The notes under the pieces were generated by a model. That model worked only from the letters and a program-made list of their open reading frames with translations. It was not told the DNA's origin and did no database searches. 64,000 bases of DNA, taken from contig NC_043001.1 in NCBI RefSeq assembly GCF_006345805.1, forward strand, positions 75,206,001 to 75,270,000, read 5' to 3'. Shown piece by piece: positions 2,728-56,685 of the stretch (within the stretch, counting starts at the first letter, position 1; every line of letters begins with the position of its first letter). Origin of the DNA: Octopus sinensis. Its lineage: Eukaryota. The translations under genes were made by a program, and so were the position numbers.

Positions 2728-3590
2728 GGATCTTTTCCCTTTGAACAGCAGATTTAGAAATCATGTTTTTGTAACTAAAACTTTCAAACTTCGGACACTG
2801 GTAGAATGTGTCATATAAAACATTTTTTACTCATAGTGTTTTTGAGCAAAGTTTATATTTACGAAGTTATTTCGTTTTAAAGTTGTCGTATTTCGGTAAT
2901 TTCAACCAATCAATGACGTGTATTTAGCTGAATAATATTACTACTGTTGTTTGTCAACAACAACTATCGGCGGTGTATATTTCGTTTGTCACTTTTATTT
3001 ATGACATCGTTCGTGTGTTTGTACTGATTTTACCCTTAAGGTTTTAGTGTTAGGGTTTTAGAGTTAGAGTTAGGGTTAGGGTTAAGGTTTTAAAGTTAGG
3101 GTTAAGGTTGGGGTTTTAGGATTAGAATTACGGAAAAAAAAATGAAAAATGAAGAAATTGGAGGAGTAGGGGGCAAAAAAGTCTTTTCAAAAATAGTAGC
3201 TGGAAAAAACCTAAAAGCAGTAGAAATGCACGAACGATTATGGTGGTACCATGAAGTAAACATGCTTCAGATATACTCGTTTATTCATACAAACATAACT
3301 GAGATGAAATATGTCATAAATAACAGTGACAAACGAAATATACACCACCGGAAGTTGTTGTTGACAAACAACAGCAGTACTTTTATTCAGCTGAATACAG
3401 TCATTGATTGGTTGAAATTACCGGAATACGACAACTTTAAAACGAAATAACTTCGTAAATATAAACTTTACTAAAAAACGCTAAGAGTAAAAGATGTTTT
3501 ATTTGACACATTCTACCAGTATACGAAGTTTGAAAGTGTTTAGTTACAAAAAATTATTTTCTGAATCTGCCGGTCAATAGGTAAAGATCC
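2728..3590. mobile_element. Foldback/MITE with ~280-bp TIRs and a central TTAGGG-like tract
   Basis: 2728-3006 is the reverse complement of ~3311-3590; termini GGATC..GATCC; both sides flanked by TAAAAAA; degenerate TTAGGG at ~3038-3127. Confidence 0.85.
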
Positions 3591-16270: not shown

Positions 16271-18240
16271 TGCCAAGGAGACATAGACGATGACTACAAC
16301 TCACTGATAGGGAAACTGAAGGAGTGTTTAAGGAAGGCTAAGTATGCCCAAGAGAAAAGAAGGGAAGAATCTCGGAAGAAACTACGAAGTTACTCGAGAA
16401 GAGGAAAAATATGAAGAGGACTATTGAAGATCACCTTGAATATTCCATTCTCAGCAGAGTGATTCGTCACCAACTAAAGAAAGACTTTGAGGCATACCGG
16501 ATGGAGAAGCTCTTGAAAGCCGCAGAGGAAAAGAAGAGCCTCAAGAAATGCAAGAGGGACATGGTACTATATAGATCGGAGGTGAGGGCCCTGAAAAATA
16601 CAGATGGAATACCGGTCAACGAGAAGAGCGAGATGGAAAAAGTTTGTGAAGACTTCCACACCAAGCTCTTTAATTCTACCAGAAATGTCCAGCCGTTACC
16701 ACCACTCCAACAGGAAGAAAACGTGCCACCTATCCTTGTTAGTGAGGTTGAAAGAACCATCGGCCCGATGAAAAACGGAAAGGCTCCAGGGAAAGACGGT
16801 ATAACATCGGAGGTGCTAAAGTCAGGCAGAGAGCAGCTCTGGAAAATCCTCACTGAGCGATTTACGCACTATCCAGACGAGGGAAGAATTCCCTCGCAGT
16901 GGAAAGAGTCAAATACCTTCCTGCTGTATAAGAAGGGCGACAGAGAAGGTCTAAAGAACTACCGACCCATATGCTTGCTGTCTCACGTGTACAAGCTGTT
17001 CACGAAGATAATTCTGAACAGGTTGTCACGTCGTCTCGACGAACAACAACCGAAGGAACAAGCAGGCTTGCGGAAGAACTACAGCACAATGGACCATATA
17101 TTTACTCTAACGCAACTGCTTGAGCGAGCAAATGAGTACAAGCTGCCTCTTTGCGTTGCGTTTATAGATTATGAGAAGGCCTTCGATAGCGTCGAAACCA
17201 ACGCAGTGCTGAACTCGCTGCAGAGGCAAGGAATCGAAGCGCAATATGTGCAGCTGCTCAGAGAAGCAAATTCCGGATGCACCACCGACATAGCTCTACT
17301 GTCATCACCCATACGAGTGCCGGTCGAGAAGGGAGTGAAGCAAGGAGATACAATCTCCCCAAAACTTTTCACTGCATGTCTCGAACAGATCATCAGAGGC
17401 ATCGACTGGCAAGGTGGTGTCAACATCAATGGCGAGCTCCTCACTCACCTCCGTTTCGCTGACGACATCGTACTCATCACTGAAAATATGGATCAGCTTC
17501 AGACCATGCTGACGGAGCTCGATATCAAAAGTTCTGCAGTAGGTCTCAAGATGAACCGCATGAAAACAAAGTCCATGCGGTCAGACAATGTACCAACAGG
17601 TCGAATGGTGATCGGCAGTGATGAAATAGAGGAGGTGAGGGAATATGTCTACCTAGGACAGGAAGTAAATATGTGCCGGAATATCAAAAAGGAGATCTCA
17701 CGGAGAGTAAGGGCCGGATGGAAGGCGTTCAATGGCATAAGGGATGTGCTCAAGGGAAGGTTGGACAGGACACCCGCGCCAACCTCATTAACAGTGCAGT
17801 TCTGCCTGCAATGTTATATGGTAGTGAAACATGGGCTGCCACAAAGAGAGAAGAGCAAAGACTGGTAACGGCTCGAAGAGCCATGGAAAGGTCAATGCTT
17901 GGTATCTCGTTGAGAGAGCACATAAGTAGCAAGATCAACAGAAAGAAGTCCGGCGTGAGAGATGTCATCGCAGAGTATACACGCAGCAAGTATAGATGGG
18001 CTGTACACGTCGCCCGGCTAACCGATAATCGGTGGACGCACGCAGCTGTCGAGTGGTACCCGCGTGAGCGGAAAATACCACCCGGAAGACCTCCACGACG
18101 GTGGAGTTACGATTTCAGGGGGACAATTGGGATCACGTGGATGAGAAAGGCGCGATCCAGAGAGGAGTGGACCGCGTGCTGTGACCAGCGGTGTCAAATG
18201 GACGCCTGACGGACTGGTCGGTCAAGGTGATCAAGGTGAT
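16271..18240 (+). mobile_element. 5'-truncated RTE-clade LINE (RT domain), one frameshift near 17775
   Basis: ORF 16411-17868: NYRPICLL, EQAGLRK, DYEKAFDS, GVKQGDTISP, HLRFADD, YVYLG; C-terminus in 17673-18209 (MLYGSETW, GRPPRRW); short tandem tail (tcaaggtga)2; (TA)n on both sides. Confidence 0.95.
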
Positions 18241-18249
18241 ATATATATT

Positions 18250-18298
<49 letters not shown>

Positions 18299-18309
18299 TA
18301 TATATATTT

Positions 18310-24280: not shown

Positions 24281-25152
24281 CTAAAGAAAAACGTCAAAAT
24301 TACAAAACTTTGTTAGAAAAACAATTGAATATTTCGTAATTAAGCTCCCATTTCGGGCTTACTCTGTTAGTAACAGTACACATTAAAAAATTTGAAAGTT
24401 CTGAATTCTCTATTAATTTAACGTTGGCGTTGTGAGAATTTCAATGTCTTTTAACATTCAGTTTTAATATTTTACACTCTTGATTGGGAAATGAAATCGG
24501 TTACATCTCAAACAAAAGTCAACAAACAAGAAATGATCTATCAAGAGAATCCTTACCTCATTGATCGAAAGCATAAAGACGATATGTTTACATTCTTGTA
24601 TTTTTCTCACAGCTAGGTTTGCTAATGATTAAATTTATTTCAGCCCTTTTGATCCTTGCTACACTTTCCGTAAAATATATATGGTTTCTTCTTAAAATTT
24701 ACGAATTTTATTTCAATTTATAAATTTTATCCAAATTAAATACAAACTTTGATATCGAGAATTAATTAGAAGTGCTTAATATGAAAGAGGACGAAGGTGT
24801 CCGTTTGTGTAGAGTTAAGAAATATAAAGAGTATAACGTAAATATAACTTCAGTGAAAAAATTTTTTACAGAATAAGACAATTCTAGAAAGCAGTAATCT
24901 AATGTAAAATAGTCACTTAATTTAACATATTAAATATTAGGCGAATAAGGCGCCCTAAATCAACAGAAAGCATTACAAAACCACAAGGAGCACCACATTG
25001 AAAATAATGCCATCTTACGTCTCTTGGTTAACCACCAGTTGCAGAACCCAAGTAGTTAATTTTTGGAACTCTAAAATTTTATAATACACTCGACAAAAAC
25101 ATTTAATTTTCCTTTCTCAAACATTCCTATTTAGCCAGTATTCATTACTTAC

Positions 25153-25304
25153 CATTTGCACATCTAATAAATGGTACATATGCGCCTCCGTACCCACATG
25201 GTTGATAGTTGATTATCCAAGTATCATTGAACATAGCGATAAGATCAATGCACGAAAGTTTTGGAGATGTAGGGAAGTTGATATACTCTAATGTTGTACC
25301 CGTG
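25153..25304 (-). CDS. SRCR gene exon 10: divergent domain 5 C-half, TGTTLEYINFPTSPKLSCIDLIAMFNDTWIINYQPCGYGGAYVPFIRCAN
   Basis: attccAG acceptor, GTAAGT donor; 152 nt, phase 2 to 1; begins TG like the other C-halves and ends I.C; restores frame between exons 9 and 11. Confidence 0.8.
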
Positions 25305-25370
25305 CTGGAATATAATAGTAATAATAACAAGAAGAAGAAGAAGAAGAAGAAGAACAACAACAACAACAAC

Positions 25371-25410
<40 letters not shown>

Positions 25411-25625
25411 GTTTCAAATTTTACCACAAGGTTAGCCATTTTGGAGGAGGGGATGAGTCGCTTACATCGACCCCAGTGTTTTACTGGTGCTTAATTTATT
25501 TAATAATGAGGTGAGGGGTATGATGTTGATTACTTCGACCTCGGTGCCAACAATTTTGCAAGCTCACCGCCTTCATAAACAAAAACCACAACAAAACAAC
25601 AACAACAATAAAAACAATAATAATA

Positions 25626-26182
25626 TGCCCTGATGCAGTGCCAGGCAGTGGCTTTCATGGCCTCTGATCTTAACTGACTAGAAGTGTTATCATGTATATG
25701 TTTTGTTTTGGTATAAAAGATGGGCTACAGCAAATATTCTACTGAATATCACAGATTTGCTTGTCACTTGCTTAACTTTTACCATTTGGGCATCTCCCTT
25801 AACTGACAATATGTGCTTCTCTAATCACGAGCAGAAATAGTTGGCGGGGCTGAGCATCAAAGCCATATGTTGAAAGGAATTCTTTGGGGTTTGAATAATT
25901 CGCCTCTGGAAACATGGGTGTTTCGTTCAACATTCATAAACAAACCTTATTTAGGGGCCGTTTGTGCTTGATGGACTACTCGAGCTGAAGAAAATTCTAA
26001 GTGGGCCCTACCTGCAAAGTCCAGCGCAATTTATCTTGTTATGAAATCACAATGTCACGCACATGTGGTTGTGATGCATGTGCCTAAGTATACCCTTATG
26101 TGAAGGGTATTCATGATGAGTATATTGGGCTTCGTATATTTGTATCTCAGTGTCACTTTGATGGCATGTGCTGCTCTCTCAG
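25626..26182 (+). mobile_element. (AAT)n-associated ~555-nt non-coding retroposon, copy 1 (full length)
   Basis: tgccctgatgcag..ctgctctctc, flanked by AAT repeats; homologous to five other copies. Confidence 0.85.
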
Positions 26183-26193
26183 TAATAATAATG

Positions 26194-26259
<66 letters not shown>

Positions 26260-26293
26260 TAATAATAATAATAATAATAATAATAGAAATAAA

Positions 26294-26357
<64 letters not shown>

Positions 26358-26409
26358 GTAACAGCAACAAAAACGACAACAATAATAACAGTAATGATAA
26401 TAATAATAT

Positions 26410-27100
26410 AACACGTGTTACAAGCGACGGAAATCGAAACAAAAACAAAGCGACTTCCCACAAACGAATATAAATAGGAGCAAATTAGTCACTCAGATTA
26501 AAACATCACTAAACATTTATGCCCAGAAACATATCTACCAAAAAACATTAGAGGCTTAGAGGTGAATGCCGACCTATTAGCTTCATGCAGCTACTATACG
26601 ATAAATATATCCATTCGAAGAAAATGAATGCGGTGTCATGTCAAAAAAGTCAATTCTGAACAAATAAACCAGTCTCCTAACGTCACCGTCAACGTTTTAA
26701 TGACAAGCCAAAACTCACGCCGGATCGGTCATCACCGACAGACCGATCTAGGCTAATAAACCAGACATAATCATTAAATCCAGGGAGGAAAATACTTGTA
26801 GACTAATAGATGTAAGTGTTCCCACTGATAAAAATATATCTATAAAAATATAGCTGAGGACCATGTCTGAGAGAAATCCAAAAGATTCTGCTGACAAGTA
26901 CTATTCACATCCTTAGAAAAGACCTTATCAATTTATATGTCCGTGTTGTATTACATGAAGATATTTCACTACTGCTCTTACCACTTCCTCTCCCCAGGCT
27001 TTCTGTCATACTGTACAATCTCTTATCCTTCACTCGCCCTAGGACGCTGGGTATGTCGCGACAAGTGATTGTAGCAAACATGCAGATTAAAAGTAAACAA
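26410..27100 (+). mobile_element. Decayed R4/Dong-type LINE 3' fragment
   Basis: LLTSTIHILRKDL resembles the R4 C-terminal LLGTAHILRK; sits between AAT/AAC tracts. Confidence 0.5.
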
Positions 27101-27221
27101 CAACAACAACTACAACAATAATTTTTTTATTAATCTTTGACACAAAATCAGCAATTCTGAGGTGAGGAGGATGTCGTTTACATCAATCTCGGTGCTAAAG
27201 ATTTTACTAGCTCGTAGCCTC

Positions 27222-27294
<73 letters not shown>

Positions 27295-27295
<1 letters not shown>

Positions 27296-27835
27296 CCAGG
27301 CAGTGGCTCTCATGGCTTCTGATCTTAACTGATTGGAAGTGTTATCATGTACATTGTTTTGTCTTGGTATAAAAGATGGGCTACAGCAAATATTCTGCTC
27401 AATACCATAGATTTGCTAGTCAGTTGTTTGACCTTAACCAGTTGAGCATGTCCCTTAGTGGCTGACGATATGTGCAACTCTGATCACGAGCAGAAGTAGT
27501 GGGGGAGCATCATAGCCATGTGTTGGGAGGGATTCTTTGGGGTTTGAATAATTCACCTCTGGAAACATGGGTGTTTCTTTCAACATCCTTAAACAACCCT
27601 TATTCAGGGACTTTTTGAGCGGGATGTGCTACTCAACCTGAAGAAAATTCTAACTGGGCCCCACCTGCAAGGTCATGTGATGTTTATATTGATATGAGAT
27701 CACCATGTCGCGCACATGTGGTTGTGATGCATGTGTCTGGTGTACCCTTATCAGACGGGTAGTCATGATGGGTATATTGGTCTTCGTATATTTTACCCCA
27801 GTGTCACTTTGATGGCATGAACTGCTCTCTCACTC
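27295..27835 (+). mobile_element. AAT-associated retroposon copy 2 (5' truncated by ~15 nt)
   Basis: Same body and 3' end ctgctctctcactc(aat)n. Confidence 0.85.
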
Positions 27836-27894
27836 AATAATAATAATAATAATGATGATAATAATGATAATAATAATAATAGTAATAATGATTT

Positions 27895-28334
27895 CATTTA
27901 TTTGCCACAAGGATAAAAGATGAGGAAGACAAGACAAAAGCTGACATAAACGTAGAAGTTATACTTGGATTCTCAACGCTACACACTGTCCAAAAAATAG
28001 CCCTGCTGGGAACAGCCCACATCTTACGCAAGGCACTAATCAATCCAATAATACAACTTAAACAAAACAAACTAGAAATACAAGACAGTCTATGCAACAA
28101 TTACCCAATGAAATAAATTCCACCAGCAAGCTAATAACCAGTGCATTACACCCTCAGCACACAATACAAGCAGTAACACAGCAAAATACTGCATCACACC
28201 TCAAGAAGAAAAAATACTAATACTGGGAAGTGTTTGCACACTCCCAACAGCAGAAAAGAACACATTAAAGGCAGACAGCATAGCAGCTGATGTCGTAGAA
28301 ATTTACCCCAATCTACCAAATGTTGAACAATTAT

Positions 28335-28335
<1 letters not shown>
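27895..28335 (+). mobile_element. R4/Dong-type LINE 3' fragment
   Basis: HTVQKIALLGTAHILRKAL plus a 3' UTR ending in (AAT)n. Confidence 0.75.
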
Positions 28336-28368
<33 letters not shown>

Positions 28369-28392
28369 TAATAATAATAATAATAATAATAA

Positions 28393-28864
28393 TTGGTATA
28401 AAAGATGGGCTACAGCAAATATTCTGCTCAATACCACAGATTTGCTTGTCAGTTGTTTGACCATAACCAGTTGACCATGTCCCTTAGTGGCTGACGATAT
28501 GTGCATCTCTGATCACGAGTAGAAGTAGTGGGGGAGCATTATAGCCATGTGTTGAGAGGGATTCTTTGGGGTTTGAATGATTCACCTCTGGAAACATGGG
28601 TGTTTCATTCAACATCTTTAAACAACCCTTAATCAGGGACCTTTTGAGTGAGATGTGTTACCCGACCAGAAGAAAATTCTAACTGGGCCCCATCTGCAAG
28701 GTCATGCGCTGTTCATCTTGTTATGAGATCACCATGTCGCGCACATATGGTTGTGATGCATGTGCCTGGTGTACCCTTATCAGACGGGTAGTCATGATGG
28801 GTATACTGGGCTTCGTATATTTTACACCAGTATCACTTTGATGGCATGCACTGCTCTCTCACTC
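28393..28864 (+). mobile_element. AAT-associated retroposon copy 3 (5' truncated)
   Basis: Starts at ttggtataaaagatggg; intact 3' end. Confidence 0.85.
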
Positions 28865-28899
28865 AATAATAATAAAAATAATAATAATAAAGATAATAA

Positions 28900-29454
28900 T
28901 GCCCTGATGCAGTACAAGGTGGTGGCTCTCGTGGCTTCTGATCTTAACTGATTGGAAGTGTTATCATGTACGTTGTTTTGTCTTGGTATAAAAGACGGGC
29001 TACAGCAAATATTCTGCTCATTACAACAGATTTGCTTGTCATTTGTTTGACCGTAACCAGTTGACAATGTCCCTTAGTGGCTGACGATATGTGCAACTCT
29101 GATCACGGACAAAAGTAGTGGGGGAGCATCATAGCCATGTGTTGAGAGGGATTCTTTGGAGTTTGAATAATTCACCTCTGGAAACATGGGTGTTTCTTTC
29201 AACATCCTCAAACAACCCTTATTCAGGGATCTTTTGAGTGGGATGGGCTACGCGACCAGAAGAAAATTCTAACTGGGCCCCACCTGCAAGGTCATGTGCT
29301 GTTTATATTGATATGAGATCACCATGTCGCGCATATATGGTTTTGATGCATGTGCCTGGTGTACCCTTATCAGATGGTTAGTCATGATGGGTATACTGGG
29401 CTTCGTATATTTTACCTCAGTGTCACTTTGATGGCATGCACTGCTCTCTCACGC
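28900..29454 (+). mobile_element. AAT-associated retroposon copy 4 (full length)
   Basis: tgccctgatgcag start; intact 3' end. Confidence 0.85.
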
Positions 29455-29485
<31 letters not shown>

Positions 29486-29486
<1 letters not shown>

Positions 29487-29931
29487 GATGGGCTACAACA
29501 AATATTCTGCTCAATACCACAGTTGTTTGACCTTAACCAGTTGAACATGTCCCTTAGTGGCTGACGATATGTGCATCTGTGATCATGAGCAGAAGCAGTG
29601 GGGGAGCATCATAGCCATGTGTTGAGAGGAATTCTTTGGGATTTGAATAATTCACCTCTGGAAACATGGGTATTTCATTCAATGTCCTCAAACAACCCTT
29701 ATTCAGGGACCTTTTGAGCGGGATGGGTTACTCAACCAGAAGAAAATTCCAACTGGGCCCCATCTGCAATGTCATGTGCTGTTTATATTGATATGAGATC
29801 ACCATGTCGCGCACATATGGCTGTAATGCATGTGCCTAGTGTACCCTTATTAGACGGGTAGTCATGATGGGTATACTGGGCTTCGTATATTTTACCCCAG
29901 TGTCACTTTGATGGCATGTACTGCTCTCTCA
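29486..29931 (+). mobile_element. AAT-associated retroposon copy 5 (5' truncated)
   Basis: Starts at agatgggctac; intact 3' end. Confidence 0.85.
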
Positions 29932-29932
29932 T

Positions 29933-29996
<64 letters not shown>

Positions 29997-30000
29997 TAAC

Positions 30001-30032
<32 letters not shown>

Positions 30033-30034
<2 letters not shown>

Positions 30035-30510
30035 TGAAATAACAGAGAACTGGTATTAGCATGTGCCAAATAAAGTTATGCAGGAGGATGGAAAAGTAAG
30101 GGTACTCTAGGACTATGATTTTTATGACAGATCGTGTAATCGAACACCGTCGACCGGATATTGTCATATTGAATAACAGAGACAAATACTGGTACATCAT
30201 TGATGTAGCCATACCAAATGACATGAATGTTGAAAAAAATCATCAAATTCTCCGAATTGAAAATAGAAATGGCCAGACCGTATCGAATGCGAGAGGGTAA
30301 TATAAAAGTGACACCACCGGTGATCGGACCGTTGGGCTCAATACCATTGAAACTTCAAAACTTCTTAAGGCAACTGGAAATCCCATGCAAGATTGATGTC
30401 TTGCAAAAAAGCAGCTTTATTGGGCTGTATTATCTGTCTGAGGTCCTTGTTGTGACTTGACAGATGACTAAAGACTTCAGTGCATTTTACCTACACTGTG
30501 TTACGAGAAA
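30033..30510 (+). mobile_element. R4/Dong-type LINE 3' fragment (RLE endonuclease)
   Basis: DRVIEHRRPDIVILN..IIDVAIPNDMN and PVIGPLGSIP..LQK; AAT tracts on both sides. Confidence 0.85.
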
Positions 30511-30521
30511 TAATAATAATG

Positions 30522-30552
<31 letters not shown>

Positions 30553-30572
30553 TAATAAAAATATTAATAATG

Positions 30573-30605
<33 letters not shown>

Positions 30606-30634
30606 CTAATAATAATAATATAATAATAATAATA

Positions 30635-30698
<64 letters not shown>

Positions 30699-30707
30699 TA
30701 TAATAAT

Positions 30708-33700
30708 AGCCACTAATAGCCGCCACTGAAACAAATAGCAATATTACTGAGCTAAATGACTTAGTATATGCAGCAGCCACTGCAGCCACAAAAGAAGCTG
30801 GATACTCCCTCAAACCCATCCAAACAGGAGTACCACCACCTAAACAAACCCTGTGGATAAATAACATAAAAAAATACAAAAAATGAGAAAAGATCTGACG
30901 GTTCTTAACGAAATCAGTAGACAATCAACGCTACTAAGCAACAAAAAGAAAACAAAAATACTGTGCAAATACAACATCACAGAAAATGATTTACCTGAGA
31001 TAAAAGAAAAGCTAAAGCAAGATATCCTTGCCAAAACACAAAGGATCCGCCGGTACGAGAAACGCCAACGTTTCTTTGAACAAAACAAACAGTTCAACTC
31101 CGACCCCCAAAAGTTCTACCAAGAACTTGGCAAAAATAAAATAGACATCACTGCAGCACCAACCGCAGAAGTGGAAAAATTCTGGAAAGAAATATGGTCG
31201 GCGAATGAACAGCCAAAAAAAAAAGAGTATTAAAACAACAAACTTAGCATCTGAGCAACTTTGGACCCCCATAACAACTGAAGAGGTCACCCAGGCACTG
31301 CAAAGACTAAGCAACTGGAAGGCACCTGGGAATGACAAGATCCCCAACTTATGGTTGAAATATCTAACAGGAATGCACAAAAAGCTGGCTGAAAACTTTA
31401 ACAACATACTGGAAGAGCCAGAGACAATGCCTGAATGGCTCACGAAGGGGAAAACCACCTTAATTCCCAAATCCAACGGGACAGCAAAACTAGAAAACTA
31501 CAGACCTATAACCTGTCTCCCTACAATGTACAAAGCGTTTACTGCAGTAATATCACAACGATTGAACAAGCACCTGGACGAAAACAACCTGTTTCCAGAA
31601 GAGCAGAAAGGATGCCGCAAAGGCTCATATGGCTGTAAAGATCAACTAATGATCAATAAAGCCATAACTGAAGAGAGCTACAGAAAGAAAAAATGCTTCA
31701 GTATGGCCTGGATCGACTACAGAAAGGCGTTTGATAGCATTCCCCACACATGGATCCTCGAAACACTAGCCATTAACAAAGTAGCACCAACAATTATAAA
31801 ATACATAGGACACTCTATGAATAAATGGCAGACAGTGCTACAGCTCCAAACAAAAGAGGGACTCATGAAAATCAAAGCCATTCCCATTCGAAGAGGAATA
31901 TTCCAGGGAGACACTGTCTCTCCACTCCTTTTCTGCTTGGCACCGTCACCTCTATCGGACATGCTAAACAGAACTGGATGCGAATATAAATGTTACGACA
32001 AAACGATCAGCCACCTTTTATATATGGATGACCTAAAACTATACGCTGCAAATGACAAACAGCTGGAAACACTACTAAAGACAGTTCATGGATTTACCAA
32101 AGAAATAGATATGAAATTTAGATTAGAAAAATGCGCCAAAGTAACCCTGAAAAGAGGAAAACTAGTTAAGAGTAGCAACATCACACTAGATAAAACCAAT
32201 GAAATAAAAGAATGAGACCAAAGCCAAACTTACAAATACTTAGGAACCCATGAACTAGATAAGACACAAAACACACAAATGAAAGAGGGAAAAAAAAAGA
32301 ATATTAGTGACGAGTTAGATCAATACTAAAAACAGAGCTCAATGCTAAAAACAAGATAATAGGTATTAACACTTTAGCCGTCCCAGTTATAAGTTACAGC
32401 TACAATATCCTTAACTGGACACTAAATGAGCTGACCAAAATAGATAGGAAAACAAGAAAAATAATGACAGGATCTAGGTTGCATCACCCAAAATCTGACT
32501 TAGAAAGGCTATATATACAACGTATAGAAGGTGGTAGAGACCTTATACAGCTGGAAAACTACTATAAAATAACCACCATAGGACTGCAGAAGGAAAGAAA
32601 ACTAATACAAATAGCGGCAAAACACGAGCAAAACAAAAAACTGTTCTCAGTATTTAAGGAAGCTGACAAATACAAACAAGAAATCATACCACCTAACAAT
32701 TATGGAGAAGAAGAAGAAGAAGAAGAAGAAGAAGAAGAAGAAAAAGAAGAAGAAGAAGAAGAAGAAGAAGAAGAAGAAAAATAAGAAAAAGAAGAAGAAG
32801 AAGAAGAAGAAGAAGAAGAAGAAGAAGGAGAAGAAGAAGAAGAAGAAGAAGAAGAAGAAGAAGAAGAAACAACAAAAGCTTTAAAACAAATGAAATCCAA
32901 ACTAAAACTAGAACAGCAACGAACCATGATAAAACGATGGCAAGAAAAGCCCCTTCATGGCAAATACTGGACTAAACTAAATGCAAAAGAAATAGACAAA
33001 GAAAAATCCCAGCAATGGTTGAGAAGCTCAGGACTCAAAACAGAGACAGGGATTTTTAATTGCAGCACAAGACCAAAGCCTCCCCACCAGAAATTACCAA
33101 AAACATGTAATGAAAAGACATATAACAAGTAACTACAGAATATGTGGAGATGGACAAGAAACAATAAATCATATTATCTCTGGCTGCCCAGTCCTGGCTA
33201 AGAAGGAATATATTCACATACACGACAGGGTTAGGACCTACATACACTGGAAGCTATGCCAACATTATGGAATAACAAAAGAAAAAAGATGGTATAGGCA
33301 CACACCAGAAAAGGTCACAGAAAACGAGAAAGCAACCATACTCTGGGATATGCCAATACACACAGATAGATAAATTAAGGCGAACAGACCAGATATAGTT
33401 GTCAGTAATAATGAAGAAAAAACTGCTTTCTAATTGATGTATCAATACCAGCAGATGACAACGTTTCTTTAAAAGAAATGGAGAAACTTTCAAAATACAA
33501 AGACCTGGAAACTGAGGTAACCAGAATGTGGAATCTAAAAACAGAAACAATTCCTATCATAGTAGGTGCATTAGGCATGATAAAAAAATGTTCAGACAAA
33601 TACATAACAAAAGCACCAGGACTTACAAACACATATAACATACAGAAAATTGCACTACTAGGCACTGCACACATCCTACGCAGAACACTTTCCATACAGT

Positions 33701-33796
33701 AACCATCAGAGCATCACAACAAATCACTGCACATACCCAAGGCACACAGAGCTGCGCTCGGTAGTGAAGTGAAAGCACGCTATAAAAATAAAACTA

Positions 33797-33800
<4 letters not shown>
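30708..33800 (+). mobile_element. 5'-truncated, frameshifted R4/Dong-clade LINE (RT, CCHC, restriction-like endonuclease)
   Basis: KAFDSIPH, RGIFQGDTVSPLLF, LYMDDLKL; ETINHIISGC; RPDIVV..LIDVSIP.DDN..EKLSKYKDL; LLGTAHILRR; (ATA)n tail; internal (GAA)n expansion at 32706-32868. Confidence 0.95.
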
Positions 33801-33874
<74 letters not shown>

Positions 33875-33875
<1 letters not shown>

Positions 33876-34429
33876 GCCCTGATGCAGTACCAGGCAGTGG
33901 CTCTCATGGCTTCTGATCTTAACTGATTGGAAGTGTTATCATGTACATTGTTTTGTCTTGGTATAAAAGATGGGCTACAGCAAATATTCTGCTCAATACC
34001 ACAGATTTGCTTGTCAGTTGTTTGACCTTAACCAGTTGAGCATGTCCCTTAGTGGCTGACGATATGTGCATCTCTGATCACGAGCAGAAGTAGTGGGGGA
34101 GCATCATAGCCGTGTGTTGAGAGGGATTCTTTGGGGTTTGAATAGTTCACCTCTGGAAACATGGGTGGTTCTTTCAACATCCTTAAACAACCCTTATTCA
34201 GGGACCGTTTGAGCGGGATGGGCTACTCAACCTGAAGAAAATTCTAACTGGGCCCCACCTGCAAGGTCATGTGCTGTTTATCTTGATATGAGATCACCAT
34301 GTCGCGCACATATGGTTGTGATGCATGTGCCTGGTGTACCTTTATCAGACGGGTAGTCATGATGAGTATATTGGGCTTCGTATATTTTACCCCAGTGTCA
34401 CTTTGATGGCATAAACTGCTCTCTCACTC
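33875..34429 (+). mobile_element. AAT-associated retroposon copy 6 (full length)
   Basis: Follows the (AAT)n tail of the R4 LINE directly. Confidence 0.87.
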
Positions 34430-34639
34430 AATAATAATAATAATCAAATTTTGAGATGTGGTTGGCAATTTTAGGGGAGGTGACAGTCTATTTACATCAA
34501 GATCAGTACTCAACTGGTACTTATTTCATTAACCTAGGTGGGGTTTGAACTCAGAACGCATAAGAATTGTTTTTAATGTATGTAGAAGTTCATAACGCTG
34601 GAGATGTACTACTCTGTCAGCTGTTCACTACAACTGAAC

Positions 34640-35063
34640 TAAGGTAATGCCTCTTCTTTTTTGAGCACCTTCCGGAGTATTTCAACGGTTCCAAGAAGCG
34701 CTGTTTTCTGCAAGTGCTCTACCCTTATTGCAGCTTTTATTTGTTCCACGTACTTCTCGAGGTTTTTGCTCACTGTTCCCAGGGCTCCGACAATTATTGA
34801 TACTACTGCTACCTTTTTCATCGACCACAACAGCTAACCTGACATATCTCTCTCAGCGTATTTTACAAGACTATGTCCGGCTTCCTTTTCTCTATCTCAT
34901 TTCTATTTTCGACGATGCCTTCAGGTTTGTGGTCGTACCAATTTTTTACTCTGTCAAGTCCATACTTGTTGCAGAGTGCCCAAAGACAAGCCTGGCTATA
35001 TTGTCGTGGCGTCTCTTATATTCCTTCTCGGCTAGTGGCGTACATAAGAAATATAAGAGACGC

Positions 35064-35066
<3 letters not shown>
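34640..35066 (-). mobile_element. R4/Dong-type LINE 3' fragment, opposite strand
   Basis: RHDNIAR, KPDIVL, IIVGALGTVSKNLEKY..LQKTALLG; adjacent (TTA)n on + equals (AAT)n in element sense. Confidence 0.8.
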
Positions 35067-35130
<64 letters not shown>

Positions 35131-52035: not shown

Positions 52036-52705
52036 ATTTATATGTGTATATTTATATATGTCTATATATGTTTCTATATGTCAAGCCTAGTCATGTTTAT
52101 TTGCACCACTATCTCCCTATCAGCTCACTTGGTTTTCTTTTATAGCTACTCTTGACCACGTTGACCTAGTTCTCGACAAACATTTCGGAGCGAAGCTCAA
52201 ATGTTTTGAACACTGATATATGTTCTCTAAGCAGAACATCGCCAGCTTTCATCTTTTGACTTCATATGTATATGTAGAGGTGCGTGGCTTAGTAGTTAGA
52301 GGTGTTGTACTGAGTGATTCTTAGCGTTCCTGAGGAAAACGTTTCATTTCACGTTGCTCCAGTTCACTCAGCTGGCAATAATGAGTATTCTTGTGACGTA
52401 TAGCCTTCCCATCTAGGTCGTGGCGAATATATACGTCACAAAATCGGGGAAACATACCTTATCTTCGGAAAGGGCCTTTGATAATTTTTCGAATTGTGTC
52501 ACGGTATTTTTTTTATTCAAAAAGGGTGGATTACCACATTAAGGCGTGGTTTCTTGTAGTAGTTCTTATACGAAAAGATATGAAAGCAGTAGACAAAAAT
52601 ACGTAGGATGTCCTAAGAAATATAAATAAATGGGTACAGAAAATTTGAACTGTGAGAGTTTCCTTTTCTATAATGTTTCATTCAGTGAGTAAAAAGTAAA
52701 CATAC

Positions 52706-52838
52706 CTGTATCCAACTGATTTACAGAAAACTTGGGCATCAATGTCATTCCAATTACTATCTGATAATGTCATCCATTTACCCTTATAATACACTTCTGC
52801 TGCTCCTACTGTGGAAGCTTCAGAAATACGAAATAGTT
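52706..52838 (-). CDS. SRCR gene exon 3: domain 2 N-half, LFRISEASTVGAAEVYYKGKWMTLSDSNWNDIDAQVFCKSVGY
   Basis: cctccAG acceptor, GTATGT donor; 133 nt; 84-nt intron after exon 2; the WGTVC Cys is replaced by Ser. Confidence 0.95.
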
Positions 52839-52922
52839 CTGGAGGAAATAAAATAATGAAATAATCAGAAACTTTATATTTATTTAGCTGAGTGTAGCTT
52901 AAATATGTTAAACAATACTTAC

Positions 52923-53092
52923 GAGCTGTACAATGTACGCCAGTGTCTTCACTATGTTGGCAGTCATGATTACCCCATGCGTTATGCGAGCAAGAATCAA
53001 GTGATAACTCTGTCCCGGAACATGTTACTTCGTCCAATATAATTTTACCTTGACCATCTACAGTCAATGTATTAATTATAGAAACACCAGAG
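52923..53092 (-). CDS. SRCR gene exon 2: domain 1 C-half, SGVSIINTLTVDGQGKIILDEVTCSGTELSLDSCSHNAWGNHDCQHSEDTGVHCTA
   Basis: cttttcAG acceptor, GTAAGT donor; 170 nt, phase 2 to 1; four conserved Cys and HxEDxGVxC. Confidence 0.96.
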
Positions 53093-53120
53093 CTGAAAAG
53101 AAATATCTTTATATAGTTTC

Positions 53121-53345
53121 TACAAAGGTTCAGTGTAGCATACATAAGTTCCTGGTTTCGGGAAAAAGAAAGTTCAGGGTATCAGTTAATTATGATTTTA
53201 TTCAAGATATTCTTCTCTCAGATTCACAGACTTATTGCAGCGGTCCTTCAGTTTTTCTAAGCCCTTTAAATGGAACTCGGAAGTTTGGGTCTCCGGCCAA
53301 GCCTTTCGCGATACCCTTAAAGCTAGGAACTTTTCAGGGCCCTTC

Positions 53346-53995: not shown

Positions 53996-54289
53996 GTGTG
54001 CATGCATCTGTGTTGTTTGTGTGTGTTTGTGTGTGTGTGCGCGCGTGTGTGTATGAGCATATATATATATATACACGATATTATCTGGCTAATAATTTCA
54101 TAACGTGTATATACGATATACCATATGCCATCATACAACATGGTTATTGCTTATACTGGATATACATGTGAAAATATATGTAAAAATTTATACAACAATA
54201 AGATGGAAGAAATAAGCTTTAATTGGAAAATACAATTCTTACGTTGCTAGCTGCTGAATATTTCATATTAGATAAATTCTTTTCTACTC

Positions 54290-54712
54290 TAGGCACAAGG
54301 CCCAAAATTTTGGGGGAGGGTTCCAGTCGATTACATCGACCCCAGTACGCAATTGGTACTTAATTCATCTACCCCGAAAGCATGAAAGGCAAAGTCGACC
54401 TCTGCGGAATTTAAACACAGAACGTAAAGACAGACGAAATACCTATTTCTTTACTACCCACAAGGGGCTAAACACAGAGGGGACAAACAAGGGCAGGCAA
54501 ACAGATTAAGTGGATTACATCTACCCCAGTGCGTAACTGGTACTTATTTAATCGACCCTGAAACGATGAATGGCAAAGTCGATCTCGGCGGAATTTGAAT
54601 TCAGAACGTAGCGGCAGACAAAATACCTATTTCTTTACTACCCACAAGGGGCTAAACACAGAGGGGATAAACAAGGACAGACAAACGGATTAAGTCGATT
54701 ATATCGACCCCA
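54290..54712 (-). mobile_element. SINE family B tandem array (about 2.3 units of ~185 bp)
   Basis: B-box and core repeated with the same linker as at 35630-35700. Confidence 0.8.
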
Positions 54713-54714
54713 AG

Positions 54715-55697
54715 ATGACTCACTTTCACCTTCAATTTTTTGCATAGTTCTAATAGCCCTTAAAAGTGAACTTAATGGAACTGAGTAAGGATATAAAATT
54801 GACGACAAGAAAATAACTTACCTATTTTATATGGATGACTTACCTATTTGATATGGCAAAGACGATAATGAGCTCGAAGTACTACTACGCAGTTGCTATT
54901 GATATTTTTGCGGTCAGTACTCTTGTTTGAGGAAGTTTGAAATCACAGGAGAAATTTTGAAGATATCCAGCGATTTCAACATCCATGAATGCGGTATGCT
55001 GTCAAAGGCCTTTTTATAATAAATTCATACGGAACTGAGATTTCTGCGTTTGTTATGACAGTTCTCAAGGATTTAAGAGTTGGTCTTTGCATCCATATGA
55101 ACCTCGTTGGCACCCTTTTTGTTCAGTGGAGAAAATATCATTCTGTTCCATAGATTTGTATGTTTTCACTACGAGGATGTACATTAAAATTTTGTACGTG
55201 GTAGATAGAAATGTTATGGGCCGATAGTTTTGGAAAAATTTGGTTTCATTATTCTTCGGGAGTAGGTAAATTAATACCTATTGCTAATTAATCAAGTAGG
55301 ATCTCTCATGATTTCATTGAATAATTTAACTAACTTTTCGTGTGCGCACGGCAGCGATGCGAGCCAGAAATTCTTCCCATGCTTCCTCTGGTAAATTTTG
55401 GTGGGATAATTTTTGCATCTAATCCAGTCTGCATTTTCATTGTATGTGGTTTTCATAACTTCAGATATTTTTCCAAAAGTTTTCAACTTCTTCCATAGGA
55501 GGTCGTGGTGGGGAAAAGGTTTTTAACGTTTATTTTCTCCTTCCCTATTCCTCTGTAAAATGTTTTCGCATTGGATTGGAACAGCTTATTTTGCTTGTAA
55601 AATTTGTTTCTCCTCGTATTCTTTGAGCGTTTGCTTGGACATTTTGCTGCAGTGTTTCTTTTGTTGAAAGCAGTTCTTTTTTTGTTGAGAGTCTATG

Positions 55698-55757: not shown

Positions 55758-56685
55758 AATAATAATAATATTATTATTATCATCATCATCATCATCGTGC
55801 CCCAGCATAGCCGCGGCCTTCGGGCCTAAACACTTTTAAGGATTTAAGGATTATCATTATTATTGTTGTTGTTTTGTTTCCTGTGTGTTGTTCCAAGTCT
55901 CACTCAGAAATCCCTTGAAAGTGCAAGTTTGATGTTTTACTGTGGCTGTAATTAAGAAGTAGCGATACTGTATTTCAGAGGCCAAAAAAATAGTGAAAAT
56001 TAAGGTTCCATTAAAGGTTTATTGTAATATTTGCAAATTTCAGAGATTTAAAAAATTTAAATATTCTCAGGTTGACCGTGTTTTTCTTAGGATTTGAACA
56101 GTACTTTTGTGAGCAATTTTTCTTAGTACTAATATTCCTGGATTTCCTCGTATTTGTCCATAATGGTTAAGAGTGTCTTTTGGTATTATCTCAAAAGCTC
56201 CGTTGATTACAGACACAGTTGTCGTTCTTAGTCGCCAGATTCTGTGACCTTTATTTCAAGGACCTTGTATTTACTTAACTGTTCAAACGTTTTTACCAAG
56301 ATGTTGCACTCCACTACGATTGATGAGTAAACATGATGTCAATCTATCTATTGTAGGCGCACGAATACTTTGAAGACTTAGATCTACAAACAAAACTTGC
56401 TGGTGGTCACCGAGAAGAGTAATTGATTCATAGTGATGAAGTTATTGTTTAACAAGTTTCCACCAACTTTGAGAATTAGAAGCAAGAGTAATAGAACTGC
56501 CATTGTGAAAATGAGAAAAAATGATCCACGTGTAAGATCATCATATAGTTCAATAGGTTGGAGACAGCGAAGACATTCTTTAATTTTCTTTTTATAGTTA
56601 CACACATTTTCAAAATAACGCATCTTAACATCAAATAGAAGCTTATGTTTTTTTTTCATATGCTAATAACCAAAGTGTATATTAC

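What the first reader, a model, noticed from the sequence alone, without database searches (positions are those of the whole stretch)
25626..34429. Non-coding ~555-nt retroposon that homes to (AAT)n: six same-strand copies in 9 kb
Seen: all six copies are bounded by AAT repeats, share one 3' end (ctgctctctcactc-AAT), and have either one common 5' start (three copies) or 5' truncations (three copies). No ORF and no clear tRNA B-box, unlike the other SINEs here. Established: fixed 3' ends with variable 5' ends are the signature of target-primed reverse transcription, and Dong (R4 clade) targets TAA repeats. Inference: a non-autonomous, microsatellite-targeted parasite of R4/Dong machinery with an unknown promoter or ribozyme. 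Its 3' end does not obviously match the R4 3' UTRs in this window, so the partner is unproven. It may already be catalogued as an unclassified repeat.
Basis: partly seen in the sequence, partly recalled or inferred. Interest (0 to 1): 0.72.

Follow-up and report, generated by a model that had tools for sequence, protein, structure and literature searches.

The report
Non-coding retroposon that targets AAT repeats
A 555-base non-coding mobile element has copied itself six times, always in the same direction, into AAT simple repeats that also hold Dong-like jumping genes; it most likely borrows their enzymes, which makes it an ordinary kind of genomic parasite with an unusual choice of target.

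Summary
Six + strand copies of a ~555-nt unit lie at 25626-34429 and nowhere else in the 64 kb. Three start at TGCCCTGATGCAG. Three are 5'-truncated, at unit positions ~15, ~84 and ~94. All end at CTGCTCTCTCAC(T/G)C-like sequence followed by (AAT)n, and all 12 junctions lie in AAT arrays, which cover only 1.5% of the window.

The copies relate in a star pattern and differ in age (1.8-12.8% from consensus), so they are separate insertions rather than local duplications.

The unit has no ORF, no LINE coding remnant, no tRNA or Rfam match, no terminal inverted repeats and no supported HDV-like ribozyme. Conserved T4 runs argue against a full-length Pol III transcript.

Four 5'-truncated LINE fragments sit in the same arrays in the same orientation. 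One has an R2-like reverse transcriptase plus a restriction-like endonuclease, i.e. Dong/R4-like.

Best reading: a non-autonomous retroposon inserted by target-primed reverse transcription at (TAA)n, probably using Dong-like machinery. The partner is unproven, because no 3' similarity exists to any LINE in the window. How the RNA is made is unknown. No copies outside the window could be retrieved. I rate it a new member of a known kind, of moderate interest.

The parts
25626..26183 (+). Copy c1: full length, older subfamily. 12.8% from the c2-c6 consensus, with a 6-nt insertion and a 3-nt deletion. Ends ..CTCTCAGT.
27295..27835 (+). Copy c2: 5'-truncated at unit position ~15 and preceded by an extra AAAA. 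3.3% from consensus.
28393..28864 (+). Copy c3: 5'-truncated at unit position ~84. 4.2% from consensus.
28900..29454 (+). Copy c4: full length. 4.9% from consensus.
29485..29934 (+). Copy c5: 5'-truncated at unit position ~94, with a 13-nt internal deletion. 4.7% from consensus. The 5' junction shows 1-2 nt of microhomology with the repeat.
33875..34429 (+). Copy c6: full length and youngest (1.8% from consensus). Its (AAT)5 tail directly abuts the 3' end of a minus-strand tRNA-type SINE.
26184..26408 (+). (TAA)~75 array between c1 and LINE fragment A. It stands for the eleven + sense AAT arrays of the cluster: 25577-25625, 26184-26408, 27222-27294, 27836-27889, 28336-28392, 28865-28899, 29455-29484, 29935-30034, 30509-30708, 33800-33874 and 34430-34444.
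26409..27095 (+). LINE fragment A: a 5'-truncated 3' end of a LINE with a restriction-like endonuclease (RLE), followed by an (AAC)n/(AAT) tail that abuts a minus-strand SINE.
27890..28335 (+). LINE fragment B: the extreme 3' end, carrying the C-terminal ..ALLGTAHILRK motif, followed by (TAA)19.
30035..30508 (+). LINE fragment C: a 3' end with the RPDIV..IDV endonuclease motif, followed by (AAT)67.
30709..33799 (+). LINE fragment D: 3.1 kb, 5'-truncated and degenerate. It carries an RVT_1 reverse transcriptase whose closest solved relatives are R2 proteins, then a CCHC motif and a restriction-like endonuclease. AAT arrays flank it on both sides.
34445..34575 (-). Minus-strand tRNA-type SINE. 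Its (ATT)n tail, read on the + strand, is the (AAT)5 that follows c6. This is the probable seed of the target array.
34576..35130 (-). Minus-strand Dong-like LINE 3' fragment (E). (AAT)22 lies at its 5' side when read in its own sense. It shows the same polarity rule on the other strand.

Best explanation
The 555-nt unit is a non-autonomous, non-coding retroposon family.

Proposed mechanism: its RNA ends in a (UAA)n tract. It is reverse-transcribed directly at a nick in the TTA strand of a (TAA)n microsatellite (target-primed reverse transcription). The (UAA)n 3' end can anneal to the nicked repeat.

This mechanism accounts for:
- the single 3' end;
- the one shared full-length 5' end plus variable 5' truncations;
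- the 1-2 nt microhomologies or extra A residues at 5' junctions;
- the strict polarity relative to the repeat.

The enzymes most likely come in trans from the Dong/R4-type LINEs that occupy the same arrays in the same orientation. These LINEs carry a restriction-like endonuclease.

The target arrays appear to be seeded at least partly by the (ATT)n tails of antisense tRNA-type SINEs. Each insertion adds a new (TAA)n tail, so a nest grows.

What is shown: copy structure, junctions, polarity, independence of insertions, absence of coding capacity, and the R2-like RT plus endonuclease of the neighbouring LINE.

What is inferred: the TPRT mechanism, use of Dong-like enzymes, tail annealing, and SINE-tail seeding.

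What is unknown: how the RNA is transcribed and how its 5' end is set.
For: - Six same-strand copies share a 3' end. Three have identical 5' ends and three have different truncation points.
- 12 of 12 junctions lie in AAT arrays, which make up 1.5% of the window.
- The tandem neighbours c3, c4 and c5 are no closer to each other (90.5-92.5%) than to c6 (92.7-93.7%). Copies differ in age, 1.8-12.8% from consensus. This means separate insertions from master copies.
- Four + strand LINE fragments in the same arrays, and two minus-strand ones elsewhere, all have (TAA)n in their own sense.
- LINE D has RVT_1. Its nearest solved relatives are R2 proteins (E 3e-25). Its C-terminus aligns with the R2 endonuclease motif KPD..D..K.
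- A related, apparently full-length LINE from another organism (L064, 54% RT identity) is also flanked by sense (AAT)n on both sides and shows no APE domain.
- Literature: Dong elements target (TAA)n in Bombyx, Anopheles and the snail Biomphalaria (PMC3812793). Octopus genomes carry full-length and recently active Dong-R4 families (PMC9115989, PMC13282606).
- The window's SINEs align with a SINE in an Octopus vulgaris transcript that likewise ends in (ATT)5.
Against: - The unit has no significant similarity to the last 300 nt of any of six Dong-like LINE fragments in the window. The usual SINE/LINE or SIDE/LINE shared tail is therefore missing here. Those six LINE 3' ends are also unrelated to each other, so the true partner may simply be absent from the 64 kb.
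- No HDV-like ribozyme, Pol III head or other promoter was recognised.
- All copies come from one 9-kb cluster.
- No copy from elsewhere in the genome or from a relative could be retrieved.
Confidence: 0.65

Rival explanations
1. The (AAT)n is the element's own 3' tail, made by a partner LINE that ends in TAA repeats (as the I factor does) and that does not target repeats. On this view the copies only appear to home because they landed in or next to each other's tails.
For: The I element ends in TAA repeats (PMC3747384). The unit has no 3' similarity to the Dong-like LINEs here. For c3, c4, c5 and c6 the upstream AAT tract is the tail of the preceding element.
Against: Without targeting, a 5' junction inside an AAT tract has about a 1.5% chance, yet it happens 6 of 6 times. 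The 5' tracts of c1 and c2 follow the head of a minus-strand SINE, not the tail of a + strand element. No APE-type LINE with a TAA tail is seen in the window; the RTE-like LINE at 16.4-18.2 kb is followed by (AT)n.
Confidence: 0.1
2. The unit is not a family of its own. It is the 3'-terminal part or UTR of a longer LINE, with a hot spot of 5' truncation. A related possibility is that it is an internally deleted Dong derivative (SIDE-like) whose parent is not in the window.
For: LINEs are usually 5'-truncated. R2 SIDEs consist of a 5' ribozyme plus the parent's 3' UTR (PMC3774820). Octopus genomes hold several Dong-R4 families (PMC13282606), so a parent could lie outside this window.
Against: Three of six copies share exactly the same 5' end, directly joined to AAT repeats. 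tblastn finds no LINE coding remnant at E below 0.1. BLASTN finds no similarity to any LINE in the window. The SIDE-like origin is not excluded, and it would be a special case of the best explanation rather than a true rival.
Confidence: 0.1
3. The six copies arose locally, either by unequal crossing-over or segmental duplication between AAT arrays, or (for the tandem trio c3-c4-c5) in a single event in which the reverse transcriptase jumped from one template to the next.
For: All copies lie within 9 kb on one strand, separated by recombination-prone repeats. TRF reports a 480-nt period across c4-c5. c3, c4 and c5 have similar divergence from consensus, 4.2-4.9%.
Against: There are four different 5' ends. 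Neighbouring copies are no more alike than distant ones. Divergences range from 1.8 to 12.8%. Different LINE fragments, not a repeated larger unit, lie between the copies. A template-jump concatemer for c3-c5 cannot be excluded, but it would still be retroposition into (AAT)n.
Confidence: 0.05

Closest known systems
R2 SIDEs (short internally deleted elements) of Drosophila (Eickbush & Eickbush 2012; described in PMC3774820)
   Same: Both are short non-coding parasites of a site-specific LINE that carries a restriction-like endonuclease. Both insert by TPRT at the same target and in the same orientation as the LINE, and both have a defined 5' end.
   Different: SIDEs carry the parent's HDV-like ribozyme and 3' UTR. 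Here no ribozyme fold was found and no 3' similarity to any LINE in the window. The target is a microsatellite rather than 28S rDNA.
Dong (R4 clade) LINEs: Bombyx mori Dong, DongAg, DongBg; octopus Dong-R4 families
   Same: Both show (TAA)n-specific, polarity-specific insertion and 5' truncation, and both occupy the same arrays.
   Different: Dong is autonomous, about 5 kb, and encodes RT plus endonuclease. B. mori Dong has a 5' HDV-like ribozyme that cuts the (TAA)n co-transcript. The 555-nt unit encodes nothing and shares no sequence with the Dong-like copies here.
Classical SINEs (tRNA-, 5S- or 7SL-derived head plus LINE-derived tail), including the octopod tRNA-type SINE present in this window
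   Same: Both are short, non-coding, LINE-dependent retroposons that end in a simple repeat.
   Different: The unit has no Pol III-derived head (ARAGORN and Rfam negative). Conserved T4 runs at about positions 79 and 513 should stop Pol III. The tail repeat has the opposite polarity to the resident SINE ((AAT)n versus (ATT)n in sense). Insertion is target-specific.
I factor (I clade) and other LINEs that end in (TAA)n
   Same: Both have a (TAA)n 3' end.
   Different: In the I factor the repeat is the element's own tail and the 5' flank is ordinary DNA with a target-site duplication. Here both flanks are the repeat.

Membership tests
SINE (Pol III-derived) | A 5' head derived from tRNA, 5S, 7SL or snRNA, with an internal Pol III promoter (A and B boxes) | tested here: not met
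   ARAGORN finds no tRNA. Rfam gives no hit at gathering score, or at E up to 10, on c6 or on c1-c5. By eye only AGTGG of the A box is present. T4 runs at about 79 and 513 are conserved.
SINE (Pol III-derived) | A 3' tail shared with a partner LINE | tested here: inconclusive
   Local alignment to six LINE 3' ends in the window gives z of at most 2.0, within the range of shuffles. A partner may lie outside the window.
SINE / non-autonomous non-LTR retroposon in general | Short, non-coding, with a fixed 3' end followed by a simple repeat, variable 5' truncation, and multiple dispersed copies | tested here: met
   Dispersal beyond this one cluster could not be tested.
SIDE-like derivative of an RLE LINE | A 5' HDV-like self-cleaving ribozyme that defines the 5' end | tested here: inconclusive
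   A descriptor search found no candidate shared by c1, c4 and c6. The number of hits equals that in shuffles. There were 0 hits when a G-C P1.1 helix was required. By eye no P1 helix of 6 bp or more can start at the shared 5' end. There is no Rfam ribozyme hit. However, the same tests were also negative on the 5' end of a full-length Dong-like LINE (L064), so sensitivity is unproven.
SIDE-like derivative of an RLE LINE | A 3' end identical to the parent LINE's 3' UTR | tested here: not met
   No match to any LINE in the window. Parents elsewhere in the genome were not testable.
SIDE-like derivative of an RLE LINE | The same target site and orientation as the parent LINE | tested here: met
   All six copies and all six Dong-like LINE fragments have sense (TAA)n.
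Dong/R4-clade LINE (applies to the neighbouring LINE fragments, not to the 555-nt unit) | A reverse transcriptase followed by a C-terminal CCHC motif and a restriction-like endonuclease, with no APE domain | tested here: met
   RVT_1 at E 3.9e-30. Nearest solved structures are R2 proteins. The C-terminus aligns to the R2 endonuclease region (RPD..IDV..K, E 0.003). Absence of APE could only be seen in the related full-length L064 element.
Dong/R4-clade LINE (applies to the neighbouring LINE fragments) | Insertion into (TAA)n | tested here: met
Dong/R4-clade LINE (applies to the neighbouring LINE fragments) | Phylogenetic placement inside the R4 clade rather than HERO, R2 or NeSL | not tested
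   No reference sequences were at hand. Some HERO families also target microsatellites (PMC4640811).
5'-truncated LINE copy | Remnants of LINE coding sequence or UTR | tested here: not met
   tblastn with C-terminal and N-terminal Dong-like proteins gives only inconsistent hits at E above 0.1.
DNA transposon / MITE / Helitron | Terminal inverted repeats, or 5'-TC...CTRR-3' ends with a 3' hairpin | tested here: not met
   No terminal inverted repeat. The ends are TGCC... and ...CACTC.

The most novel reading that the evidence does not exclude
The unit shares nothing with its LINE partners except the (UAA)n tail. That would mean an RLE-type, site-specific LINE (Dong-like) chooses templates in a relaxed way, through annealing of the repeat tail to the nicked microsatellite. 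It would also mean the precise 5' end is set by an RNA element of a kind not yet described, either an unrecognised self-cleaving motif or a repeat-dependent promoter. Together with antisense SINE tails acting as seeds, this would make a self-propagating microsatellite ecosystem of retroelements.
Probability: 0.15. Interest if true: 0.65.

Novelty: new member of a known kind. Interest (0 to 1): 0.38.

Why it matters
Non-autonomous parasites are well documented for APE-type LINEs (SINEs), and for R2 as SIDEs. My literature searches found no description of such a parasite for microsatellite-specific Dong/R4 LINEs; this is absence of a hit, not proof.

If this family does depend on Dong, three things follow:
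- It offers a natural test of what an RLE-type LINE needs in a template RNA: a 3' UTR structure or just the repeat tail.
- It would explain part of the growth of long, interrupted (AAT)n arrays in octopod genomes.
- It would help re-classify some of the many "unclassified SINE" or "unknown" repeats reported there (PMC13282606).

R2-type enzymes are being developed as gene-insertion tools, so template rules in their relatives are of practical interest.

Tried and rejected
- **More copies elsewhere.** Exact 17-21-mers were scanned in the metagenome, viral and bacterial/archaeal genome collections. Only chance matches turned up; BLAST of the fetched loci gave hits of 27 nt or less.
- **Sequence strings in papers and a transcriptome excerpt.** Strings from the unit were searched in the paper library and in the 400-kb Octopus vulgaris transcriptome excerpt. 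Nothing was found.
- **Exact-product look-ups.** Window ORFs, including the 50-aa antisense ORF of the unit, were looked up. None is on record.
- **Protein searches for the source genome.**
  - The best RT relative is 54% identical.
  - The best relative of an SRCR exon is 77% identical.
  - The source genome and its close relatives therefore seem absent from the collections.
- **Rfam.** The whole window was searched at gathering score and the copies at E up to 10. Only low-complexity artefacts (CrcZ) and weak snoRNA noise appeared.
- **HDV-like ribozyme descriptor.** It is not distinguishable from shuffles and no candidate is shared between copies. The positive control on a full-length Dong-like LINE also failed, so this negative is weak.
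- **Hammerhead idea.** It came from CUGAUGC at positions 5-11. I rejected it because the core A9 is replaced by C and there is no Rfam hit.
- **Internal TATAAAAG at positions 88-95 with an initiator-like CTCAATA about 33 nt downstream.** I rejected it as the element's promoter. Transcripts from it would lack the first ~120 nt, and no copy starts there.
- **Conserved RNA structure.** The fold z-score is -2.97, but only one compensatory pair appears among six copies, so this is not informative.
- **Bacterial promoter/terminator scan.** Irrelevant for a eukaryote.

Full report
**1. What is there**

Reading 25000-35000 and running BLASTN with copy 6 against the whole window gives exactly six matches, all on the + strand:
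- c1 25626-26183
- c2 27295-27835
- c3 28393-28864
- c4 28900-29454
- c5 29485-29934
- c6 33875-34429

There is no further copy or fragment on either strand of the 64 kb.

c1, c4 and c6 start at the same base (TGCCCTGATGCAG). c2 starts at unit position ~15, after four extra A. c3 starts at ~84. c5 starts at ~94 and has a 13-nt internal deletion.

All six end at ...CTGCTCTCTCACTC, with single substitutions in c1, c4 and c5, and run straight into AAT repeats.

All six 5' flanks are also AAT-type repeats. Perfect AAT/ATT arrays occupy only 1.5% of the window, yet all 12 junctions lie in them.

**2. The copies are separate insertions**

The three tandem neighbours c3, c4 and c5 are no more similar to each other (90.5-92.5%) than each is to the distant c6 (92.7-93.7%).

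Divergence from a consensus of c2-c6 is:
- c6 1.8%
- c2 3.3%
- c3 4.2%
- c5 4.7%
- c4 4.9%
- c1 12.8%

c1 also carries subfamily-type indels.

There are four different 5' ends, and different LINE fragments lie between the copies. Together these points argue against unequal crossing-over or segmental duplication, and for repeated retroposition from master copies over a long period.

A published octopus substitution rate can be derived from JC 0.09 at about 25 My (PMC13282606). If it applies, the copies would be very roughly 5-15 My old and c1 about 40 My. This rests on the octopod assignment in section 5 and on a consensus built from only five copies.

A single-event concatemer made by template jumping cannot be excluded for c3-c4-c5. 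It would still be retroposition into the repeat.

**3. What the unit lacks**

- No + strand ORF of note. The longest ones run into the repeat as poly-Asn.
- No remnant of LINE coding sequence (tblastn, all E above 0.1 and inconsistent between copies).
- No tRNA.
- No Rfam family at gathering score in the window, or at E up to 10 on the copies. This includes tRNA, 5S, 7SL, snRNAs and all self-cleaving ribozyme families.
- No terminal inverted repeats, and no Helitron-type ends.

T4 runs at about positions 79 and 513 are present in all copies that cover them. From the established behaviour of Pol III terminators, this argues against a full-length Pol III transcript.

The RNA is predicted to be somewhat more structured than shuffles (z -2.97). 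Six decaying copies give only one compensatory pair, so no structure can be claimed.

**4. The neighbours**

The same AAT super-array contains four + strand, 5'-truncated LINE fragments:
- A 26409-27095
- B 27890-28335
- C 30035-30508
- D 30709-33799

Each is followed by (AAT)n or a degenerate form of it.

Fragment D has an RVT_1 domain. Its nearest solved relatives are R2 proteins (E 3e-25). Its C-terminus has a CX2CX7HX4C motif followed by RPDIV...IDVS...K, which aligns with the restriction-like endonuclease of R2.

Two further fragments of such LINEs lie on the minus strand, at 34576-35064 and about 56073-56243. Each has (TAA)n in its own sense.

So six of six LINE fragments and six of six 555-nt copies have the same polarity relative to the asymmetric repeat.

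A related LINE from another, unidentified organism (L064) has 54% RT identity. It is about 5.3 kb long, has no APE hit, and is flanked by sense (AAT)n on both sides.

Published work fits:
- Dong elements (R4 clade) target (TAA)n in Bombyx, Anopheles and the snail Biomphalaria (PMC3812793).
- Octopus bimaculoides has a full-length Dong (PMC9115989).
- O. vulgaris has five recently active Dong-R4 families with 1129 young insertions, plus 893 unclassified SINE families (PMC13282606).

I call the LINEs here Dong-like by architecture and target. Clade placement against HERO, some of whose members also target microsatellites (PMC4640811), was not tested.

**5. Source organism**

The abundant tRNA-type SINE of the window looked octopod to me from memory.

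As a test, the window's SINE copies were aligned to a SINE-bearing O. vulgaris transcript held in a paper supplement. They align with z up to 11, and that copy also ends in (ATT)5.

This supports an octopod origin but does not identify the species. The protein collections do not seem to hold the source genome.

**6. Mechanism proposed**

The anatomy is what target-primed reverse transcription (TPRT) at a repeat produces. A nick in the TTA strand exposes a 3' OH. An RNA ending in (UAA)n is copied from its 3' end. Incomplete copying gives 5' truncations. The 5' joins show 1-2 nt of microhomology (c3, c5) or extra A residues (c2, c6).

The elements known to do this at (TAA)n are Dong-type LINEs, and they are present here, so they are the most likely source of enzymes.

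Two of the arrays directly abut the 3' ends of minus-strand SINE copies. These are the array at 34430-34444, next to the SINE at 34445, and the tail of LINE A, next to the SINE at about 27126. The SINE's own tail is (ATT)n in sense, which reads as (AAT)n on the + strand. SINE tails therefore probably seed the targets, and each new insertion adds another (TAA)n tail. This would explain how eleven AAT tracts and ten retroelements came to fill 9 kb.

These steps are inference. None was observed directly.

**7. What argues against a Dong partner**

The unit shows no similarity to the last 300 nt of any of the six LINE fragments (z of at most 2). However, those six LINE 3' ends are also mutually unrelated. 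The window holds six different families, and a seventh, the real partner, may lie elsewhere. Alternatively, only the repeat tail may matter.

B. mori Dong sets its 5' end with an HDV-like ribozyme that cleaves a (TAA)n co-transcript, and R2 SIDEs keep just that ribozyme plus the 3' UTR (PMC3774820). I therefore searched for the double-pseudoknot fold.

Results for the 555-nt unit:
- No candidate is shared by the three full-length copies.
- The number of hits equals that in shuffles.
- None survives a G-C P1.1 requirement.
- By eye no P1 helix of 6 bp or more can start at the shared 5' end.

Control: the same searches, and Rfam, also found nothing at the 5' end of the full-length L064 LINE.

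The negative is therefore weak, and how the RNA is made remains open.

**8. Rivals**

- **Own (TAA)n tail from a non-targeting partner such as an I-like LINE.** This is contradicted by six of six 5' junctions lying in the repeat. For c1 and c2 the upstream tract follows a SINE head, not another element's tail.
- **Mere 3' part of a longer LINE.** This is contradicted by three identical 5' ends joined to the repeat and by the absence of coding remnants. A SIDE-like origin from an unseen parent remains possible and would refine the main explanation rather than replace it.
- **Local duplication.** This is contradicted by the star-like relations, different ages and different 5' ends.

**9. Novelty and verdict**

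In kind this is a familiar thing, a short non-coding parasite of LINE machinery. Its less familiar traits are microsatellite-specific and polarity-specific insertion, no Pol III head, and no recognisable LINE-derived end.

I found no description of a non-autonomous partner of Dong/R4 elements in the searchable literature. Repbase and Dfam could not be queried, and octopus repeat libraries contain hundreds of unclassified SINE-like families, so it may already be catalogued without interpretation.

I rate it a new member of a known kind, of moderate interest. The Dong dependence is plausible (about two in three) but unproven.

Noticed in passing
window 34430-34575, 27096-27221, 25312-25570: Three minus-strand copies of a tRNA-type SINE each have their (ATT)n-type tail on the left. 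On the + strand that tail reads as the AAT tract used by the + strand LINEs and the 555-nt unit. Read in the SINEs' own sense, the three SINEs are arranged head-to-tail with only repeat (now filled with insertions) between them. This suggests the SINE itself may also prefer this microsatellite, in the opposite polarity.
   Followed up: partly
window 32706-32868: An (AGA)54 microsatellite lies inside LINE fragment D, between the RT and the CCHC/endonuclease region. In the LINE's frame it reads as a long poly-Glu/Lys stretch.
   Followed up: no
window 55781-55835 (minus sense): A ~55-nt non-repeat segment (..CCTTAAAAGTGTTTAGGCCCGAAGGCCGCGGCTATGCTGGGGCAC) lies between (CAA)n/(TAA)n and (GAT)n/(TAA)27 tracts, downstream of a minus-strand Dong-like LINE 3' end. 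It may be an extremely 5'-truncated copy of yet another (TAA)n-targeting element.
   Followed up: no
window 16411-18209: An RTE-like LINE with a largely open RT reading frame (485 aa plus an overlapping 178 aa) is followed by (AT)n at 18239-18307. It has 29% identity to the RT of LINE D, so it belongs to a different clade.
   Followed up: no
window 52678-53145 (minus strand): Two exon-like stretches encode halves of scavenger-receptor cysteine-rich (SRCR) domains, apparently from a host gene.
   Followed up: partly
window 54262-54712: There are two to three tandem minus-strand copies of the tRNA-type SINE (TRF period 184), joined without a microsatellite between them. Next to them lies a fragmentary RT-coding region on both strands at 54711-55372.
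   Followed up: no
window 3044-3125: A degenerate telomere-like TTAGGG/TTAAGG repeat occurs in an internal position.
   Followed up: no
window 33962-34000 (unit positions 88-126) and the same positions in the other copies: A perfect TATAAAAG box lies about 33 nt upstream of an initiator-like CTCAATA inside the 555-nt unit, conserved in all copies that cover it. c3 and c5 begin within about 10 nt of this box. Whether it is a relic of the unit's source gene or a coincidence is unknown.
   Followed up: partly
L064 5782-11181: An apparently full-length Dong-like LINE of about 5.3 kb from an unidentified organism is flanked by sense (AAT)n on both sides. It has a 360-nt 3' UTR, and its C-terminus (..VLLGTAHILRKTLSLQT) resembles that of the window's LINE D. 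Neither Rfam nor my descriptor detects a 5' ribozyme in it.
   Followed up: partly
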